The notes beneath the pieces were generated by a model. It did not search any database and was not told where the DNA came from. It was given only the letters and a program-made list of their open reading frames with translations. Below are positions 38,142 to 47,344 of a stretch of DNA of 64,000 nucleotides, piece by piece. The position numbers and the translations under genes are program-made. Each line of letters opens with the position of its first letter. The stretch's first letter is position 1. Origin of the DNA: Macrostomum lignano (taxonomy: Eukaryota); NCBI GenBank assembly GCA_002269645.1, contig NIVC01000024.1, positions 620,001 through 684,000 on the forward strand. The letters are read 5' to 3'.

Positions 38142-38558
38142 TTAAGCCGTATTAAGCTTCCTATAGACACGGGTGCAGACCACGTCACCAGCCTTGATTG
38201 TGCACACCATCTCGTTGTCGCCATCACCCTGCAGCTTGCGTTCAATAACGGTCTCTGGCTCGCTGGCCTGCTTGTGCACCAGCTCGCCACCCTCGGTCAG
38301 CGTAATCGTGCTCCGCACCTTCCTACCATCAATGGTGGTCTCTTCAAACTCTTTGTCCAACTCAAACGTGATCTCAGAGTTCTTAAACGTAGAGATGGTC
38401 TTCATCGTGCAGGTGCCGTCCTCGTTGCGCAAAAACTGCACATCCGGCTTGACCGTGTTGCCAACTTTGCGCAATACAAAGCCAACTCCGATTGCTTTCA
38501 TGTAGGCGTCGAAATTCTCTGACGACTCCAAGCGCCAGGTGCCGATGAACTTCTCCAT
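38142..38558 (-). CDS. FABP: Fatty acid-binding protein (FABP/iLBP family), coding region intronless, 138 aa
   Basis: F.GTWRLESSENFDAYMKAIGVG..LRK.G, STFKNSEITFEL..EFEETTIDGRKV.S, VCTRVY. Confidence 0.95.
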   Translation of the reverse strand: MEKFIGTWRLESSENFDAYMKAIGVGFVLRKVGNTVKPDVQFLRNEDGTCTMKTISTFKNSEITFELDKEFEETTIDGRKVRSTITLTEGGELVHKQASEPETVIERKLQGDGDNEMVCTIKAGDVVCTRVYRKLNTA

Positions 38559-38754
38559 TGATTAAGACTTGATGGTTTATTTCTTTAATTGATTATAATT
38601 GTGGCGTGACAACTATCAGGTCAACAAGTTAGTTAAACTGTAATAAAATGTTTTTAAAAAAGGTTTTGTTAAAAAAAGTTAACTGCGGGTGCTGCTTAGT
38701 TAAATTCCAGCCCGTCTTGACGTATAGCGAATGGTCGGGGGACACTTTGCCTGT

Positions 38755-41177: not shown

Positions 41178-41604
41178 GGTGGCTGAGTGTACACAAGTAG
41201 TACATCTTGCACAGAAGTTATATCTATTTATCAATGTCTATCAACTCTTAGATCTATGGATACTCGTAAGTTAACTATTTAAACGAAAGATACTAAGAAA
41301 ATTAAGGCAATTAAGGAAACGTTATTCTTAAAGCTAAATGTAACATCAATTTGAAGTTAGCTAACAAATATGAAAGTACTATATGTACTAACAAATTGTC
41401 TGACTTATCAAAACAAGCAAATTAATTAAAAACGGTATAAAAACTGCCCGTTTGCTCAGACAATTAGACATACATCAGTAAAGCAAAAATTCACACTGCA
41501 ACTCAGAAAAAATTTAATTTAAACTAAAACCTATATGATAATTGAGATTTTGAATTTTTAAGGAAACAATGAAAAAACCACTTAGAGAGAGCAGAGGCAC
41601 AAAT

Positions 41605-41730
41605 ATATCTGACAGTCACAGATATAAATGGCTGACAGCCTGACAATTTACTTTAGATATCTGACAGTCAGGCTTAGATGTGTCTGAGAGTCAGGCTTAG
41701 ATGTGTCTGACAGTCAGGATTAGATGTGGC
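41605..41730. repeat. Short degenerate repeat (ctgacagtcaggcttagatgtgt)
   Basis: 4-5 units downstream of G6PC. Confidence 0.75.
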
Positions 41731-41802: not shown

Positions 41803-42933
41803 CTAGCGCTCCTTCTTAGCAGCGGACTGTTTGCTGGGAGGTTTGGCAGCCGCCGTGGCGGTACCGTGTCTGGCAGCGTGCGGCCTGACGGCGTGGTGAC
41901 TGCCGCGGCCTGCGTTAGCCAGCCGACGCGAGTCCAGCTTGGCCGCCAGCACCGGCAGCACGATGGTGACAATCAGCGGCATCAGGGCGTACTTGAATGC
42001 GGCAAACAGATAAGTCTGTAGATCGGAGAAGCCTGGCTTCGGCTGGAATCGCTTCTCCAACAATACGCAGGCGCACATTGACAAGAATCCTGCGAAGCAC
42101 TTAGTCACGGTTCTACTAGGAGCCGGAACAGGCAGCAGGCTGGCCAGGAAGCTTGAGAAAGCGGCGCCAAGGATGGCACCAATATCGCGGTGGATGCTGA
42201 ATAGCGGCGTAGTGTCAATGCTAATCCACTCCGAGCTGGCGCAGTGCCGTTCGGCCAGCCGGATGGACCAGTCGGGATCGAGGCCCAGCTGCCGCAGGCA
42301 GTGACTAACACCCAGGGAGCTGCTGAACATTAGGAAGGCCAACAATAGCAGAGCAAACGGGCGAAGTATCTGGCTACCCATTTTCACGGCCACAATTGAC
42401 AGCAGACAGCCAGTGATCACTCCGCCAACAGCCTGATGCGGAAAGTGAGTTGCTAAGAAACAGCGCGACACGCCAAGGGCGGTGATGCCAGCAAAGTAGG
42501 CGTATCTGACAGCCAGCCTGGACTTGGTTGGCAAGCTCTGGCTGGCGTACAGCACAGGGATGTACCAGGAGGCCGCTGCCACCATGCAGTGACCGGACGG
42601 AGACCCTGGGCCAGTCTCGCAGGTCTGAGGAAACTGGGCCAGGGTTAGATTCACTTGGCGCAGCCGCTCGCCAACCCACCAATAGGGCCGCTCTCCGTGC
42701 AGAGCCCATTTTAACAAACCATTGAGCCACTCGGAGAAAGCGGCCGACCACAATACCGTGAGGCCCAGGTGCGAGTTCAACGCGTAGCACAATGGGAAAG
42801 CAATTATAAATGCGCTGACGGGATGCCCAAAGTCCGATAGCAGCATTAGAGGCTGGGCCAGCGGCATCAGGCCGGTCTGTAGGCCCGAGACGGCTCGAGC
42901 GCCGGACAGATGAAGCGAATCGAATACAGACTC
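41803..42933 (-). CDS. G6PC3: Glucose-6-phosphatase catalytic subunit (G6PC3-like, PAP2 family); single coding exon lacking a genomic ATG
   Basis: PAP2 motifs: WLNGLLKWALHGERPYWWV, QFPQTCETGPGSPSGHCM, SRCFLATHFPHQ, IDTTPLFS. The frame opens at acceptor tacttaaccttgcag|GAG, with an in-frame TAA at 42963-42961. Confidence 0.9.
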   Translation of the reverse strand, partial: ESVFDSLHLSGARAVSGLQTGLMPLAQPLMLLSDFGHPVSAFIIAFPLCYALNSHLGLTVLWSAAFSEWLNGLLKWALHGERPYWWVGERLRQVNLTLAQFPQTCETGPGSPSGHCMVAAASWYIPVLYASQSLPTKSRLAVRYAYFAGITALGVSRCFLATHFPHQAVGGVITGCLLSIVAVKMGSQILRPFALLLLAFLMFSSSLGVSHCLRQLGLDPDWSIRLAERHCASSEWISIDTTPLFSIHRDIGAILGAAFSSFLASLLPVPAPSRTVTKCFAGFLSMCACVLLEKRFQPKPGFSDLQTYLFAAFKYALMPLIVTIVLPVLAAKLDSRRLANAGRGSHHAVRPHAARHGTATAAAKPPSKQSAAKKER

Positions 42934-43129
42934 CTGCAAGGTTAAGTATTCGGCTTGGTTTTAGCGAATCTTTTTCCTAATTAGGGCAGTTGGTACTGCC
43001 GGCAAACAGTAATGAGCACTCTCCTGACCCCTGAACAGACACTTCTGTTTCTCCGGCAAGCGGGCCACATGCAAAGCCTCTCTATCCGGCCCTCGGGTCC
43101 TTTGAAACTCACAATAGCAAGCTTTTCTC

Positions 43130-43330
43130 ACCTATCTTCTTATCTCTCCTTTCCTATCCCTTCTCCTCTCTCATCTCCTTTCCTCTCCCTTCTCCTCTCT
43201 TTTCCCTCCTCTTTCCTTTCTCCTCCCTTTTCCTCTATCTTCTTCCTCCTTTCCCTCTCTCTTTTCTTATCCCTTCTCATATCCTTTCTCCTATTTCTCT
43301 TCTCTATTCTCTCTCCTCTCTCCCTTCCTC
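43130..43330. repeat. CT-rich low-complexity tract between FUOM and G6PC
   Basis: Polypyrimidine on the + strand. Confidence 0.8.
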
Positions 43331-43877
43331 TGGCCCACAGTCATGCGCCAGGTTCTCAATCTGGCCCTTGAGGTAGAAAGTTTGCCAACCCTGATCTAGA
43401 TGGTCTTTCCTATAGGTAGATACCTTGGCCTTAACTCATTCTATTTAATGTGGTAAAGCTACAATTTTAACAATTCTATGATCAATGCATGGCTGAGCTT
43501 CCCTGTGGTAGCTTTGTTGGAAACTAAAAATCAAATGGCGCCTATTCAAATGCAGAAATTCTTAGAAATTTAAAACCAAAGTCAAACCGATTTAATATAC
43601 AATGCTCAATCATATAGAATGTTACCAGTTTAATTTGTATAAAAATATTTAATAATATTGGTGAAAAATAGGTACAGTAAAAGCACTAATTATCTAGCTT
43701 AGAGTGTAAATTTGCCGATAGAAAAGTACAACAAAAAATGAAAAAACTAGAACCTGTAGAAAATATTATTATTCTCGATTTGTGCACATGTTAAGTTTAG
43801 AAACTCCAACTGAGCATTTTAACAATTATTGCAATGTAGTAGAAGTTTACAATAGCTAAACAGACTTAGATTAAATT

Positions 43878-45565
43878 TCAAATAGCAACGCCTTTGGTGA
43901 TAATGATATTAGCATACTGGGCCAGCTCCCCCGTATGGACAACACAGTAGGCCCTCTCCGCTGCTCTGTAAAACTGTTCGCGAGGCAATAGTTGCACCCG
44001 ACTTTTGCCGCTGCTGCTGGTCAATAAGTTAAAGTGCGGGTGCACTTTTGCATAGTCCGACCAGATTGGCGGGTTGGAACTGAATTTGTCAGCGTCTGAT
44101 GGCTCAACCTGCCAATTCAAATATGATGCTTAATGCCCCCACATACTGCTCACCACACCCGTTCTAAATGTAGTTCCCACCCTCTCCGACTCCCCAGCCC
44201 TGTCTCCCCACCCCTCTGTCTCCCCATCCCTCTCCATCTCCCCACCCCTCTCCAGCTCCCTACCCCTCTCCAGCTCCCTACCCCTCTCCAGCTCCCCACC
44301 CCTCTCCAGCTCCCCACCCCTCTCCATCTCCCCACCCCTCTCCGTCTCCCCACCCCTCTCCATCTCCCCACCCCTCTCCATCTCCCCACCCCTCTCCATT
44401 TTCTCACCCCTCTCCATTTTCTCACCCCTCTCCGTCTTTTCACCCCTCTCCGTCTTCTCACCCCTCTCCGTCTTCTCACCCCTCTCCGTCTTCTCACCCC
44501 TCTCCATCTCCCCACCCCTCTCCATCTCCCCACCCCTCTCCATTTTCTCACCCCTCTCCGTCTTCTCACCCCTCTCCGTCTTCTCACCCCTCTCCGTCTT
44601 CTCACCCCTCTCCATCTCCCCACCCCTCTCCATCTCCCCACCCCTCTCCATTTTCTCACCCCTCTCCGTCTTCTCACCCCTCTCCGTCTTCTCACCCCTC
44701 TCCGTTTTCTCACCCCTCTCCATCTCCCCACCCCTCTCCATCTCCCCATCCCTCTCCGTCTTCCCATCCCTCTCCGTCTCCCCATCCCTCTCCGTCTCCT
44801 CACCCCTCTCCATTTTCTCACCCCTCTCCGTCTTCTCACCCCTCTCCGTCTTCTCACCCCTCTCCGTTTTCTCACCCCTCTCCATCTCCCCACCCCTCTC
44901 CATCTCCCCATCCCTCTCCGTCTTCCCATCCCTCTCCGTCTCCCCATCCGTCTCCGTCTCCTCACCCCTCTCCATTTTCTCACCCCTCTCCGTCTTCTCA
45001 CCCCTCTCCGTCTTCTCACCCCTCTCCATCTTCTCACCCCTCTCCGTCTTCTCACCCCTCTCCATCTTCTCACCCCTCTCCGTCTTCTCACCCCTCTCCG
45101 TCTTCTCACCCCTCTCCGTCTTCTCACCCCTCTCCGTCTTCTCAGACCTCTCCATCTTCTCACCCCTCTCCGTCTTCTCACCCCTCTCCGTCTTCTCACC
45201 CCTCTCCGTCTTCTCACCCCTCTCCGTCTTCTCACCCCTCTCCGTCTTTCCACCTTCTGCGTCTCCCCGCGCATACTGTGCCAGTCTCCCTCAGGCTCAA
45301 CATAACCACCAAGCAAGCAACGAACCTGCATGAGTGCAATGGGACTCTCAATATAGGTATCAATAGGCAGCACAGACATGATGGCTTCCAATAGTTGAGG
45401 CATTTCGACACCGTCATAGCGAATGACAGAACAGCTGGCCTTCCGGGCAATGCTGTGGCTAGGAAAATGGGCATCAGCCAGTACCAGAGTGTCGCCATGG
45501 CCCATCTCTGCTAGGCACTTGAGCAGTTCAGGCGACAACAGACTGGGTATGCCTAACAGAGGCAT
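43878..45565 (-). CDS. FUOM: Fucose mutarotase (RbsD/FucU family), 2 exons
   Basis: Exon 1 is 45565-45326 (L.GIPSLLSPELLKCLAEMGHGDTLVLADAHFP…LLEAIMSVLPIDTY, cag|gttcgt). Exon 2 is 44108-43878 (PPIWSDY…REQFYRAAERAYCVVHTGELAQYANIIITKGV). The junction is phase 0. Confidence 0.93.
44175..45255. repeat. 18-bp minisatellite (ctcacccctctccgtctt) in the FUOM intron
   Basis: About 60 units. Confidence 0.97.
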
Positions 45566-47344
45566 TTGAGCTGGAAGATGCAGTAAAAGAACACTCTAAA
45601 GAATAAGCAGTGACCCCAAGTGTTTGGCACAAGGGGTTGTGCTATTTTTCACTTCTAGCATAATTTTTCTGACAAGTTCCATGACTAATAAACATGCATA
45701 TTGCACACATTAGACACATGTCAGGAGTTGCCGTCAATGCATTTGCAGTGGAAACAAGGGTCTTTTCACCGTGAAATAATCCTGTTTGGACAACTCTTTA
45801 TACTATTAAAATTTATCTGCTAGCTATTGCCACACTACACATTGCAAGACTGCAAGTTCACATGAGCAAGTAATAGACAACAGACTTGGTTTTGAGATTC
45901 AACAAAGTTGATATGTAAAAATTTCAATCATTAGCTAAACATTTTACACTATATAATACTGTATAAACAAAGCTTTGAAGCTCATTGCATCAAAGAAGCA
46001 ACCAAGTCATTAATGGTAGGTACAACCAAGCAATGAAAAATGCCTTATTATCTACTTAGTATTATACTATGTCTATTTTTTGGGTAGGCATTATTGCAAC
46101 TTACCTTAGCTAGGCCCACACTTTTGAAGGTTATTACATTTGTAGTATACTAGAAATCTCTATTCTAAAATTTTTGGCATACCAATGTATAGTTTAACTA
46201 TCTTGGCATACCACTTTAGGCTCAAGTAAATTTTTTGCACACCAACTTATGCTTACCAAAACTTTCAAACTTTGGTGAAAAAAAATTACACATTGCAATA
46301 AATTATCTTTTTTTAAAGTATAGGCCTATATGCTAGGTCCCTAAGAATTACCTGTAGACCATAGTCAAAAAGATGGCACAGTGTGCGCCAAAAAGATTTT
46401 TTTGGGACAATCTGTATACCATCTATGTGCCATTTGTGTGCCATCTATGCGCCATGTCTATGCCCTTATTTTATGTTTTTATATAATTTATGCAATTTAT
46501 ATAATTCATGTATTTTATATAAATTACATATTTTATAACAAATTTACAAAATTCTTAGAATTCATGCAGACTCAATATGCTACACCAGTTTTATGCTAAT
46601 AAAGATTCTATTCTGATTCCTTATACACCAAAGTTGTGCACAATACTGCATATGTCAGGGACCTTATATGCCGCATGCGCCACATGCGCTAGGGACCTCA
46701 GTGTGCACCATGATTGTGCGCTGCAAGTGCCAAGGACCTTAGTGTATGCCATGATTGTGCACTGAGTATGCCAAGGACCCCTTGTATATACCAGAATTTT
46801 CCATGGCAAAGGCCACCTTCTTGACTATGGCCTGTAGACAAATTGTTTGCAAGAGATTTGCTTACTAAGCTTTTCTTATTGAGATTTGCCTGCAATATAT
46901 TTTGCCTATGAAAAAATTGCCTATAGAGATTTTCTTGCAATGCAATTTTCCTGCAAGTGAATTAATTGCCTGCCAAGTTGTTTCTCACTGAGGTTTGTCT
47001 ATGATGCTTTTTGCTATAGTGCATTTTGTAGCTAGATTTGGTTTATATTTCCCTCCCCCTTTTTAAAATATGTATTTGATATATAGTTATTATCAAAATG
47101 TTTTGATTGGATAAATCTTTTTATTAAGACTTACTATACTATAACTAAGCATTAAGGAGGCAATACAAACAAAAAATATAGCATGGAAATCTACTGAACA
47201 TTAAAGAGCCATCATGTCAAACATAAAAGAGACACCATGTCAAACAAAATACACAATTTCAAACGTAAAAGTAAGCGTCATGCCAATTTTAAAGGAGCCA
47301 CTATAGAGCTAAGGAAATTGTAGCACTAGCTACTTATTGTATGG

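What the first reader, a model, noticed from the sequence alone, without database searches (positions are those of the whole stretch)
42900..42965. Glucose-6-phosphatase gene has no start codon; a spliced-leader AUG would complete it exactly
Seen: the conserved G6PC N-terminus (ESVFDSLHLSGARAVSGLQ, comparable to MDFLHRNG..IQHLQ / MESTLGAG) starts immediately after a strong acceptor with a branch-like element (tacttaaccttgcag|GAG). An in-frame TAA lies 28 nt upstream and there is no in-frame ATG. I found no ATG|GT micro-exon in the ~940 nt up to the FUOM stop. The first genomic ATG is 22 codons in and would delete conserved sequence. Established: platyhelminth spliced leaders end in AUG, and that AUG can serve as the initiator Met. 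Inference: SL trans-splicing yields M-E-S-V-F…, so translation of this gene depends on trans-splicing.
Basis: partly seen in the sequence, partly recalled or inferred. Interest (0 to 1): 0.78.

Follow-up and report, generated by a model that had tools for sequence, protein, structure and literature searches.

The report
Flatworm G6Pase gene borrows spliced-leader AUG
This intact Macrostomum lignano glucose-6-phosphatase gene has no start codon of its own and most likely gets its AUG from the trans-spliced leader RNA, a mechanism already documented in flatworms, so it is a clean example rather than a new kind of thing.

Summary
On the minus strand, a single-exon G6PC/PAP2 ORF (42933..41803) starts right after ttgCAG|GAG. 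An in-frame TAA sits at 42963-42961 and the first ATG is codon 23 (42867).

The window is Macrostomum lignano Mlig_3_7 (NIVC01000024.1). This species' 35-nt spliced leader ends in ATG, and its trans-acceptor motif YTNCAG matches TTGCAG. In 23 of 45 homologues the initiator Met aligns with window F4. An invariant Gln (Q19) lies upstream of M23, so the start must fall in the 13 ATG-free in-frame codons from just after the TAA through F4.

GenBank labels all three genomic copies 5'-partial. The two copies whose names are visible share a transcriptional-unit name with the upstream fucose mutarotase gene. That points to a polycistron cut using experimental evidence. No plausible cis exon exists.

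One correction: the two other copies read ttgCTG|GAG, yet the CDS is under purifying selection (dN/dS 0.08). A second in-frame AG 3 nt downstream (GAG|TCT) is shared by all copies, so the product may be M-SVFD rather than M-ESVFD.

I could not retrieve any SL-junction read. SL-AUG initiation is established (Cheng et al. 2006), so this is a new member of a known kind with modest interest.

The parts
41803..42933 (-). Single-exon glucose-6-phosphatase (G6PC-like, PAP2) ORF. It has 376 sense codons from GAG (E1) plus the TAG stop, no genomic ATG before codon 23, and ends in KKER (a KKxx-type ER-retrieval motif).
   Evidence: ORF list and sequence. Pfam PAP2 E = 6e-17. 99% identical to M. lignano PAA49631 and 38% to Owenia G6Pase, with hundreds of G6PC hits. 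The catalytic K/R-P, PSGH and SR..H columns are invariant. dN/dS is 0.083 against the paralogous copies.
42934..42939 (-). TTGCAG, the proposed SL trans-splice acceptor (junction 42934|42933). It matches the M. lignano trans-acceptor motif [T/C]TNCAG and is in frame with the ORF. It reads TTGCTG in the two other genomic copies.
   Evidence: Motif from PMC8629364. It is one of only three YTNCAG sites between the FUOM stop and codon 23.
42931..42933 (-). GAG, the second AG of a tandem CAG-GAG acceptor (alternative junction 42931|42930). It is also in frame and present in all three copies. The window's GenBank CDS starts at the next base (TCT, S2).
42961..42963 (-). In-frame TAA that closes the reading frame 9 codons upstream of E1.
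   Evidence: the translation of 41806-42963 contains one stop.
42865..42867 (-). First genomic in-frame ATG (M23, MPLAQ). Starting here would delete the conserved N-terminal motif, including invariant Q19.
42877..42882 (-). CTACAG, a third in-frame YTNCAG acceptor (junction 42877|42876), conserved in all copies. An SL-AUG fusion here would give M-TGLMPLAQ and also delete the conserved motif.
42934..43877 (-). 944-nt FUOM-G6PC spacer, the putative outron or operon intercistronic region. It contains ATTAAA signals at 43653, 43634, 43596 and 43449, and a GA-rich simple repeat at 43143-43331. It has no usable in-phase ATG exon.
43878..45565 (-). Upstream L-fucose mutarotase (FUOM/FucU) gene with two exons (45565-45326 and 44108-43878). 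It has the same orientation as G6PC and, in the two other copies, the same published transcriptional-unit name.
45571..45576 (-). TTCCAG acceptor 5 nt upstream of FUOM's own ATG. It is a likely SL site for the first gene of the unit. An SL AUG here would be out of frame.
   Evidence: The FUOM GenBank models start 9 nt after the ATG in two copies.

Best explanation
The gene is an intact, selected glucose-6-phosphatase of Macrostomum lignano. It has lost the ancestral genomic start codon: the family's initiator Met column is now Phe4.

It is transcribed downstream of the fucose mutarotase gene, probably as part of one precursor RNA. The 35-nt spliced leader, which ends in AUG, is trans-spliced onto an in-frame acceptor just upstream of the conserved N-terminus. 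The SL AUG then serves as the initiator.

In the window copy the acceptor is a tandem CAG|GAG pair.
- Junction 42934|42933 gives M-E-S-V-F-D-S-L-H.
- Junction 42931|42930 gives M-S-V-F-D-S-L-H.
Both junctions are in frame. Which one is used is not settled.

Shown here:
- the sequence anatomy and the homology;
- purifying selection on the CDS;
- the AUG-ending SL and the acceptor motif (from the literature);
- the 5'-partial, transcriptional-unit-derived annotation.

Inferred:
- that trans-splicing occurs at this site;
- that the SL AUG is the codon used.
For: 1. No genomic start is available. TAA lies at 42963-42961 and there is no ATG until codon 23.
2. The start must lie in that gap. In 23 of 45 homologues the initiator Met aligns with F4, Bulinus even begins MFDSLHL, and invariant Q19 lies upstream of M23. 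A profile of the N-terminal motif alone picks this ORF as the best hit in the whole window.
3. The host SL ends in ATG, and the trans-acceptor motif YTNCAG equals TTGCAG (PMC8629364). About 0.03 in-frame motif sites are expected by chance in the permitted interval (one search counts).
4. GenBank models of all three copies are 5'-partial. They start 0-18 nt downstream of the shared GAG|TCT junction and never extend upstream of the acceptor. A TransDecoder 5'-partial ORF requires the transcript model to begin downstream of the TAA.
5. FUOM and G6PC share transcriptional-unit prefixes with consecutive gene numbers: Mlig020263 g5/g6 and g7/g8/g9. Such units were cut into genes only where SL-read or poly(A) evidence existed (PMC5730564). 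A poly(A)-only cut would have left the TAA in the model and produced a complete MPLAQ ORF.
6. The 944-nt same-strand spacer is under the 1-kb operon threshold used for this species.
7. No cis alternative exists. There are 5 in-phase ATG..|GT combinations, none with GTRAG, and the only sizeable one (ATG 43070) lies in a block absent from the other copies.
8. The gene is functional. dN/dS is 0.083 with 20 synonymous and 5 non-synonymous differences, and the catalytic motifs are invariant.
9. SL-AUG initiation is experimentally established in flatworms (Cheng et al. 2006, as cited in PMC12582326 and PMC9851317). Wiberg et al. call the Macrostomum SL's final ATG a translation start codon (PMC10468722).
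Against: - No SL-junction read, cDNA or peptide was seen. Exact look-ups of M-ESVF..., M-SVF... and MPLAQ... products found no transcript-derived gene call. A second homology search with the N-terminal 70 residues returned nothing.
- The CAG acceptor is CTG in the other two copies, which have identical CDSs and, jointly with the window copy, show purifying selection. So CAG|GAG cannot be the universal junction. The shared alternative is a GAG acceptor, normally the weakest kind.
- The annotated 5' ends scatter over 18 nt and are not identical between copies. They are therefore not precise SL coordinates. FUOM models are clipped 9 nt into a genuine CDS in two copies.
- The SL AUG has U at -3, a weak Kozak context. 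Leaky scanning to M23 is possible.
- The polypyrimidine tract is poor, and the branch-like element is only about 8 nt from the AG.
Confidence: 0.8

Rival explanations
1. Translation starts at the first genomic ATG (M23, MPLAQ). This could follow leaky scanning past a weak-context SL AUG, or SL addition at the downstream in-frame acceptor ctaCAG|ACC (42877). The protein would lack the N-terminal 19-22 residues.
For: - M23 is in frame, and no out-of-frame ATG lies between 42933 and 42867.
- CTACAG is a perfect YTNCAG match conserved in all copies.
- The SL AUG has U at -3 (SL sequence).
Against: - It would delete the family's N-terminal motif, including invariant Q19.
- All three annotated transcript models begin upstream of Q19.
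- A minor truncated isoform is not excluded.
Confidence: 0.07
2. Near-cognate initiation on an mRNA that keeps the upstream sequence. The candidates are UUG (42939-42937, A at -3) in the window copy, or CUG (the CAG-to-CTG codon) in the other two copies.
For: - TTG is in frame in all copies. The paralogues carry TTG CTG GAG, and CUG is the best near-cognate codon.
- This would explain why loss of the CAG acceptor is tolerated.
Against: - It requires a transcript that starts between the TAA region and the codon, or a long 5' leader. The spacer contains 9 ATGs.
- The annotated models do not extend upstream of the acceptor.
- Near-cognate starts are inefficient.
- An AUG-ending SL is available in this host.
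Confidence: 0.04
3. A cis-spliced upstream exon supplies the ATG. It could be a small exon in the spacer, or FUOM exon 1. The FUOM exon 1 donor (ALMQ|gttcgt) is phase 0 and would join in frame to the G6PC acceptor, making a FUOM(1-80)-G6PC chimera.
For: - The FUOM exon 1 donor is phase 0 and the G6PC acceptor is phase 0.
- Flatworm acceptors are often shared between cis- and trans-splicing (PMC12582326).
- ATG 43070 ... GGG|GTCAGG is an in-phase candidate.
Against: - None of the spacer candidates has the GTRAG donor motif. The ATG 43070 block is missing in the other two copies.
- The RNA-seq-based GenBank models have no such junction and are flagged 5'-partial.
- Homologues place the protein's extreme N-terminus at this point, and none carries a FucU half-domain.
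Confidence: 0.04
4. Assembly error. The true genomic sequence is TTGCATGGAG, with an ordinary genomic ATG. A 1-nt deletion in the long-read assembly would have produced TTGCAGGAG here and TTGCTGGAG in the other copies.
For: Both observed variants are one deletion away from TTGCATGGAG, which would read ATG GAG TCT in frame.
Against: - It needs two different deletions at adjacent, non-homopolymer positions in independent contigs, and the same one in both L001 and L002.
- A single A/T substitution between homeologues is far more parsimonious.
Confidence: 0.02
5. The locus is a decaying pseudogene or retrocopy that lost its start codon and is not translated.
For: It is a single-exon gene, in a genome averaging about 5 introns per gene, and it has no ATG.
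Against: - dN/dS is 0.083 over 25 substitutions. The ORF is intact in three copies and the catalytic residues are invariant.
- It is included in an expression-based annotation.
- There is no SL remnant upstream. The best local alignment score to the SL is 7, and 24% of YTNCAG sites in the window score as high.
Confidence: 0.02

Closest known systems
SL-AUG-initiated mRNAs of flatworms (Cheng, Cohen, Ndegwa & Davis 2006, J Biol Chem 281:733; called 'slORFs' in PMC9851317)
   Same: - The SL ends in AUG.
- The acceptor lies in frame directly before a conserved N-terminus.
- There is no usable genomic AUG.
- The initiator Met is supplied in trans.
   Different: [quoted passage not shown] I found no gene-level report for Macrostomum lignano.
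- Here the junction is a tandem CAG-GAG acceptor.
- The CAG is polymorphic between homeologous copies.
- Use of the SL AUG is inferred, not shown.
M. lignano SL trans-splicing and operons (Wudarski et al. 2017, PMC5730564; Ustyantsev & Berezikov 2021, PMC8629364)
   Same: - Adjacent genes on the same strand, under 1 kb apart.
- The downstream gene starts at a YTNCAG acceptor.
- Both genes are derived from one published transcriptional unit.
- It is a conserved housekeeping-type gene, the class reported as enriched among trans-spliced genes.
   Different: - Those papers do not discuss the SL AUG as an initiator.
- The 944-nt spacer is far longer than the ~100-nt mode. It is inflated by a ~190-nt simple repeat.
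Metazoan glucose-6-phosphatase catalytic subunits (G6PC1/2/3; PAP2 superfamily)
   Same: - 31-37% identity over about 90% of the length.
- The phosphatase signature residues are invariant.
- The N-terminal M-D-x-L-H..LQ motif is conserved (apart from its Met).
- A C-terminal di-lysine motif (KKER) is present.
   Different: - The family's initiator Met is Phe here.
- The gene is intronless.
- The C-terminal tail is longer and Ala/Arg/Lys-rich.
NAGNAG tandem acceptors
   Same: Two AGs lie 3 nt apart, so either choice keeps the frame and changes the product by one residue (E).
   Different: NAGNAG acceptors are described for cis-splicing. Here the partner would be the SL. In two of three copies only the weak GAG remains.

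Membership tests
Glucose-6-phosphatase catalytic subunit (PAP2 superfamily) | PAP2 domain detected above the curated threshold | tested here: met
   PF01569, 62 bits against a cutoff of 27.2, residues 58-185.
Glucose-6-phosphatase catalytic subunit (PAP2 superfamily) | Phosphatase signature K..RP / PSGH / SR.....H with the catalytic Arg and His residues | tested here: met
   K84, R91, P92, P121-S122-G123-H124, R166 and H172 are invariant across 46 sequences. S165 and H175 are at least 90% conserved. Numbering is that of the alignment's first sequence, which carries 9 extra residues upstream of E1.
Glucose-6-phosphatase catalytic subunit (PAP2 superfamily) | Closest relatives outside the species are named G6PC proteins, aligned over nearly full length | tested here: met
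   The hits listed after the M. lignano cluster are G6PC, G6PC2 or G6PC3 wherever a source names them, at 31-43% identity and up to 92% coverage.
Glucose-6-phosphatase catalytic subunit (PAP2 superfamily) | Glucose-6-phosphate hydrolase activity and nine-helix ER membrane topology | not testable with these tools
The C-terminal KKER is consistent with ER retrieval (sequence).
SL-AUG-initiated flatworm mRNA (Cheng et al. 2006) | The host has an SL whose 3' end is AUG | tested here: met
   The host was identified as M. lignano. The SL CGGTCTCTTACTGCGAAGACTCAATTTATTGCATG is given in PMC8629364, and the point is also made in PMC10468722.
SL-AUG-initiated flatworm mRNA (Cheng et al. 2006) | The mRNA is trans-spliced at the proposed acceptor | tested here: inconclusive
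   - Indirect support: the YTNCAG match; 5'-partial models that begin 0-18 nt downstream of the shared GAG|TCT junction; a transcriptional-unit name shared with FUOM.
- No junction read was retrievable.
- The CAG is absent in two copies.
SL-AUG-initiated flatworm mRNA (Cheng et al. 2006) | The SL AUG is in frame with the conserved ORF, with no intervening stop | tested here: met
   Both tandem junctions (42934|42933 and 42931|42930) fall on codon boundaries of the ORF.
SL-AUG-initiated flatworm mRNA (Cheng et al. 2006) | No genomic AUG can encode the conserved N-terminus | tested here: met
   - There is a TAA 9 codons upstream, and the first ATG is codon 23, after invariant Q19.
- No consensus cis exon exists.
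SL-AUG-initiated flatworm mRNA (Cheng et al. 2006) | Translation actually initiates at the SL AUG | not testable with these tools
   This needs ribosome profiling, N-terminal proteomics or a reporter assay.
M. lignano operon (criteria of Ustyantsev & Berezikov 2021) | Adjacent genes in the same orientation, with a repeat-adjusted intergenic distance under 1 kb | tested here: met
   The spacer is 944 nt on the same strand, including about 190 nt of simple repeat.
M. lignano operon (criteria of Ustyantsev & Berezikov 2021) | The downstream gene is SL trans-spliced, or both genes lie in one precursor transcript | tested here: inconclusive
   - Shared transcriptional-unit prefix with consecutive gene numbers in two copies: g5/g6 and g7/g8/g9.
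- The SL track itself was not seen.

The most novel reading that the evidence does not exclude
After the recent genome duplication in M. lignano, the homeologous G6Pase copies, all of which lack a genomic start codon, have diverged in how the start is supplied. One copy (the window) uses a strong CAG trans-acceptor. The other two have lost it (CTG) yet remain under selection. They would depend on a rare GAG trans-acceptor 3 nt downstream, or on CUG near-cognate initiation.

That would be a natural case of ongoing turnover of the trans-splice junction or start site in a gene that is obligately dependent on the SL AUG. It would also give a handle on how ancestral start codons are lost once an AUG-ending SL is available.
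Probability: 0.25. Interest if true: 0.45.

Novelty: new member of a known kind. Interest (0 to 1): 0.3.

Why it matters
Annotation. GenBank lists all three M. lignano G6Pase proteins as 'partial'. They are probably complete once the SL-encoded Met is added. The same is likely true of many other '5'-partial' models in this genome.

Biology. This is a clean, conserved-enzyme example in a free-living model flatworm of a gene whose translation would be obligately coupled to trans-splicing. M. lignano is transgenic-tractable, so it could serve as a test case for SL-AUG initiation outside parasites.

Limits. It does not reveal a new mechanism.

Tried and rejected
- **Direct transcript evidence.** Exact-product look-ups for MPLAQ..., M-SVFDSL... 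and M-ESVFDSL... found nothing. The 90% cluster of the protein holds only three GenBank genome-derived members. A second homology search with the N-terminal 70 residues returned 'no candidate' even though known proteins contain that stretch. This looks like a limitation of the word index.
- **Published gene tables.** 'Mlig020263' appears in no searchable paper. It is not in the held supplements of PMC5816591. PMC8629364 has no held supplements.
- **Retrocopy idea.** I asked whether the intronless gene is a retro-copied SL-mRNA with a decayed SL upstream, because TTGCAG resembles the SL end TTGCATG. The best local alignment of the SL to the 50 nt upstream scores 7. That is matched or exceeded by 24% of YTNCAG sites and 46% of TTGCAG sites in the window. 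Rejected.
- **SL RNA gene in the window.** No exact SL tail was found and there are no Rfam hits.
- **Upstream cis exon.** I enumerated the candidates and found no consensus donor in phase.
- **Pseudogene.** Rejected by dN/dS of 0.083.
- **Branch-point claim.** TACTTAAC lies only about 8 nt from the AG and differs in the paralogues. I did not use it as evidence.
- **Cross-species orthologues.** M. cliftonense, M. hystrix and other Macrostomum species are not represented in the protein collection. Nothing falls between 99% and 43% identity, so conservation of the arrangement could not be tested.
Full report
**What is there**

The feature lies on the minus strand. The sequence reads ...gattcgcTAAaaccaagccgaatacttaaccttgcag|GAG TCT GTA TTC GAT TCG CTT CAT CTG TCC GGC GCT CGA GCC GTC TCG GGC CTA CAG ACC GGC CTG ATG CCG...

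- The acceptor G is at 42934 and the first exon base at 42933.
- The in-frame TAA is at 42963-42961.
- The first in-frame ATG is codon 23 (42867-42865).
- The frame stays open for 376 codons to TAG at 41805-41803.
- The 'TTG' start in the ORF list is an artefact of the bacterial start-codon rule.

**What the gene is and whose it is**

- The product has a PAP2 domain.
- It is 99% identical to Macrostomum lignano PAA49631, 'BOX15_Mlig020263g8, partial'. Otherwise it is 31-43% identical to metazoan glucose-6-phosphatases.
- The window is Mlig_3_7 contig NIVC01000024.1, with record coordinate = window + 620,000.
- The phosphatase signature residues are invariant in a 46-sequence alignment.
- The protein ends in KKER, a di-lysine ER-retrieval-type motif.

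Two further genomic copies exist, on NIVC01003824.1 (L001) and NIVC01000260.1 (L002). Both have the same gene order: fucose mutarotase, then G6Pase, then FABP/lipocalin.

Their CDSs are identical to each other. They differ from the window copy by 20 synonymous and 5 non-synonymous changes (dN/dS 0.083, dS 0.072). The gene is therefore under purifying selection and is not a pseudogene.

**Is the N-terminus really missing a start?**

- In the alignment, the family's N-terminal motif M-D/E-x-L/V-H-x-x-G-V-x-x-I-x-x-L-Q lines up with F4-D5-S6-L7-H8-L9-S10-G11-A12...L18-Q19.
- The initiator Met falls in the F4 column in 23 of 45 homologues.
- Most of the rest have an internal Met in that column, behind a short predicted extension.
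- Bulinus begins MFDSLHLWGV.
- Q19 is invariant.
- A profile built from these 19 columns alone, searched against every six-frame segment of the window, returns this ORF as its best hit (E = 0.03, next best 0.82).

The ancestral start codon has therefore been replaced (Met to Phe). Starting at M23 would remove conserved sequence. The only room for a start is the 13 in-frame codons from just after the TAA through F4, and none of them is an ATG.

**Does the host offer the proposed solution?**

Yes.

- M. lignano has a single 35-nt SL, CGGTCTCTTACTGCGAAGACTCAATTTATTGCATG.
- Its top trans-acceptor motif is [T/C]TNCAG.
- About 30% of its genes are trans-spliced.
- Operons are defined by repeat-adjusted spacers under 1 kb (PMC8629364).

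TTGCAG|GAG fits the motif and is in frame. The motif occurs 326 times in the 128 kb of both strands. About 0.03 in-frame sites are therefore expected in the 13 permitted positions. Only three YTNCAG sites exist between the FUOM stop and codon 23.

That a flatworm SL AUG can act as the initiator is established (Cheng et al. 2006).

- PMC12582326 notes that all reported flatworm SLs carry a 3'-terminal ATG.
- PMC9851317 summarises that the SL AUG is in frame in 28% of trans-spliced S. mansoni transcripts and that more than 40 cDNAs require it.
- Wiberg et al. describe the final ATG of the Macrostomum SL as a translation start codon (PMC10468722).

**Indirect experimental evidence from the published annotation**

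GenBank flags the G6Pase of the two named copies as 'partial'. The window's own model likewise starts without a Met.

- The window's CDS starts at S2 (42930).
- L001's starts at S6.
- L002's starts at L7.

A 5'-partial ORF requires the transcript model to begin downstream of the in-frame TAA. All three models therefore begin 0-18 nt downstream of the shared GAG|TCT junction (3-21 nt downstream of CAG|GAG), and none extends upstream.

The upstream FUOM and the G6Pase also carry the same name prefix with consecutive numbers:

- L002: Mlig020263g5 and g6.
- L001: g7 and g8, with the FABP as g9.

In that annotation the prefix identifies a cluster of 'transcriptional units' assembled from RNA-seq. 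Units were cut into genes by the TBONE pipeline only where SL-containing reads or poly(A) reads gave a boundary (PMC5730564).

Two unrelated genes can share a prefix only if they lay on one assembled precursor. A cut made only at FUOM's poly(A) site would have left the TAA in the model and produced a complete MPLAQ ORF, not a 5'-partial one. The simplest reading is that SL reads mark a trans-splice site here.

The boundaries are fuzzy. FUOM models in the window and L002 start 9 nt inside a genuine ATG-initiated CDS. That is 12-14 nt past a good ttccag| acceptor. The annotated coordinates therefore cannot fix the junction to the base.

**The correction: the CAG is not shared**

Aligning the three loci shows that the window's aatacttaaccttgCAGgag reads aataattaaccttgCTGgag in both other copies. 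The CDS has stayed under purifying selection overall, so CAG|GAG cannot be the junction for every copy.

Three nucleotides downstream, GAG|TCT (42931|42930) is present in all three copies and is also in frame. It coincides exactly with the start of the window's GenBank CDS.

- In the window, the pair forms a CAG-GAG tandem acceptor. General splice-site preference favours the upstream CAG.
- In the paralogues, only the weak GAG remains.
- Alternatively, the substitution could be very recent. Or the new CTG could serve as a near-cognate start.

Either tandem junction gives an SL-AUG fusion in frame, M-E-S-V-F-D or M-S-V-F-D. I therefore support the mechanism but not the specific peptide.

**Alternatives examined**

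- *Cis exon.* The 944-nt spacer has 9 ATGs and 5 in-phase ATG...|GT combinations. None has the species' GTRAG donor motif. The only substantial one (ATG 43070) sits in a block that is replaced in the other copies.
- *FUOM fusion.* FUOM exon 1 ends in phase 0, so a FUOM(1-80)-G6Pase fusion is formally in frame. No model shows it. Homologues end their N-terminus exactly here.
- *Retrocopy with an SL remnant.* Not supported.
- *Assembly error.* A true sequence of TTGCATGGAG would need two different adjacent deletions in independent contigs. This is unlikely.
- *Direct evidence.* I could not obtain any. No transcript-derived protein for this gene exists in the searchable collections. No paper text or held supplement mentions the locus.

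**Verdict**

My confidence is about 0.8 for 'SL supplies the AUG at one of the two tandem acceptors'. Within that, I put roughly 0.5 on CAG|GAG and 0.3 on GAG|TCT in the window copy.
- The mechanism is textbook for flatworms and has been noted for Macrostomum. This is a new member of a known kind.
- Its practical value is to the annotation: 'partial' proteins that are in fact complete. It is also a tidy test case in a transgenic-tractable species.
- The paralogue difference at the acceptor is the only mildly unexpected element.

Noticed in passing
window 45556-45576 (minus strand): FUOM has a ttccag| acceptor 5 nt before its own ATG. An SL joined there would read ATG CTC AAA TGC CTC TGT TAG. 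That is an out-of-frame 6-codon uORF overlapping the true start, so the same SL AUG that would rescue G6Pase would be a liability for its neighbour.
   Followed up: partly
window 45556-45565; L002 4073-4082: The GenBank FUOM models in the window (PAA93594, Mlig021926g1) and in L002 (PAA86896) are flagged 'partial' and start at LGIPSLL, 9 nt after a perfectly good genomic ATG. The L001 copy is complete. This suggests the pipeline's SL-derived 5' ends overshoot by about 12-14 nt and create false 'partial' calls.
   Followed up: partly
window 38142-38558 and 38633-38638 (minus strand): The downstream FABP/lipocalin gene (138 aa, with its own ATG) is named Mlig020263g9 in one copy. That is the same transcriptional unit as FUOM and G6Pase, which hints at a three-gene precursor despite a ~3.2-kb spacer. 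It has a ttattacag| acceptor 80 nt upstream of its ATG. An SL AUG there would open a 3-codon uORF (ATG TTT AAC TAA).
   Followed up: partly
window 44209-45248: The FUOM intron is almost entirely an 18-nt tandem repeat (about 58 copies, 92% matches). It produces very long spurious ORFs on both strands and differs in length and sequence between the three genomic copies.
   Followed up: partly
window 41660-41728; L001/L002 equivalents: A 23-nt tandem repeat (TCTGACAGTCAGGCTTAGATGTG, 3 copies) lies about 75-145 nt downstream of the G6Pase stop. It is expanded to many more copies in L001 and L002. No AATAAA lies between the stop and the repeat. The nearest ATTAAA is at 41518.
   Followed up: no
window 43045-43190 vs L001/L002: A block of about 145 nt in the FUOM-G6Pase spacer, just after the GA-rich simple repeat at 43143-43331, is unalignable or replaced between the window copy and the other two copies. 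The flanks are 95-96% identical. This block contains the only sizeable in-phase ATG exon candidate.
   Followed up: partly
window 41803-42933: The G6Pase gene is intronless in all three copies, whereas the genome averages about 5 introns per gene (PMC5730564). No poly(A) or SL remnant was found that would mark it as a retrocopy.
   Followed up: partly
tool behaviour: A homology search with the first 70 residues of the ORF returned 'no candidate shares three 5-residue words'. Yet proteins found contain that exact stretch. The word index evidently does not cover all words, so a negative result from short queries is not informative.
   Followed up: no
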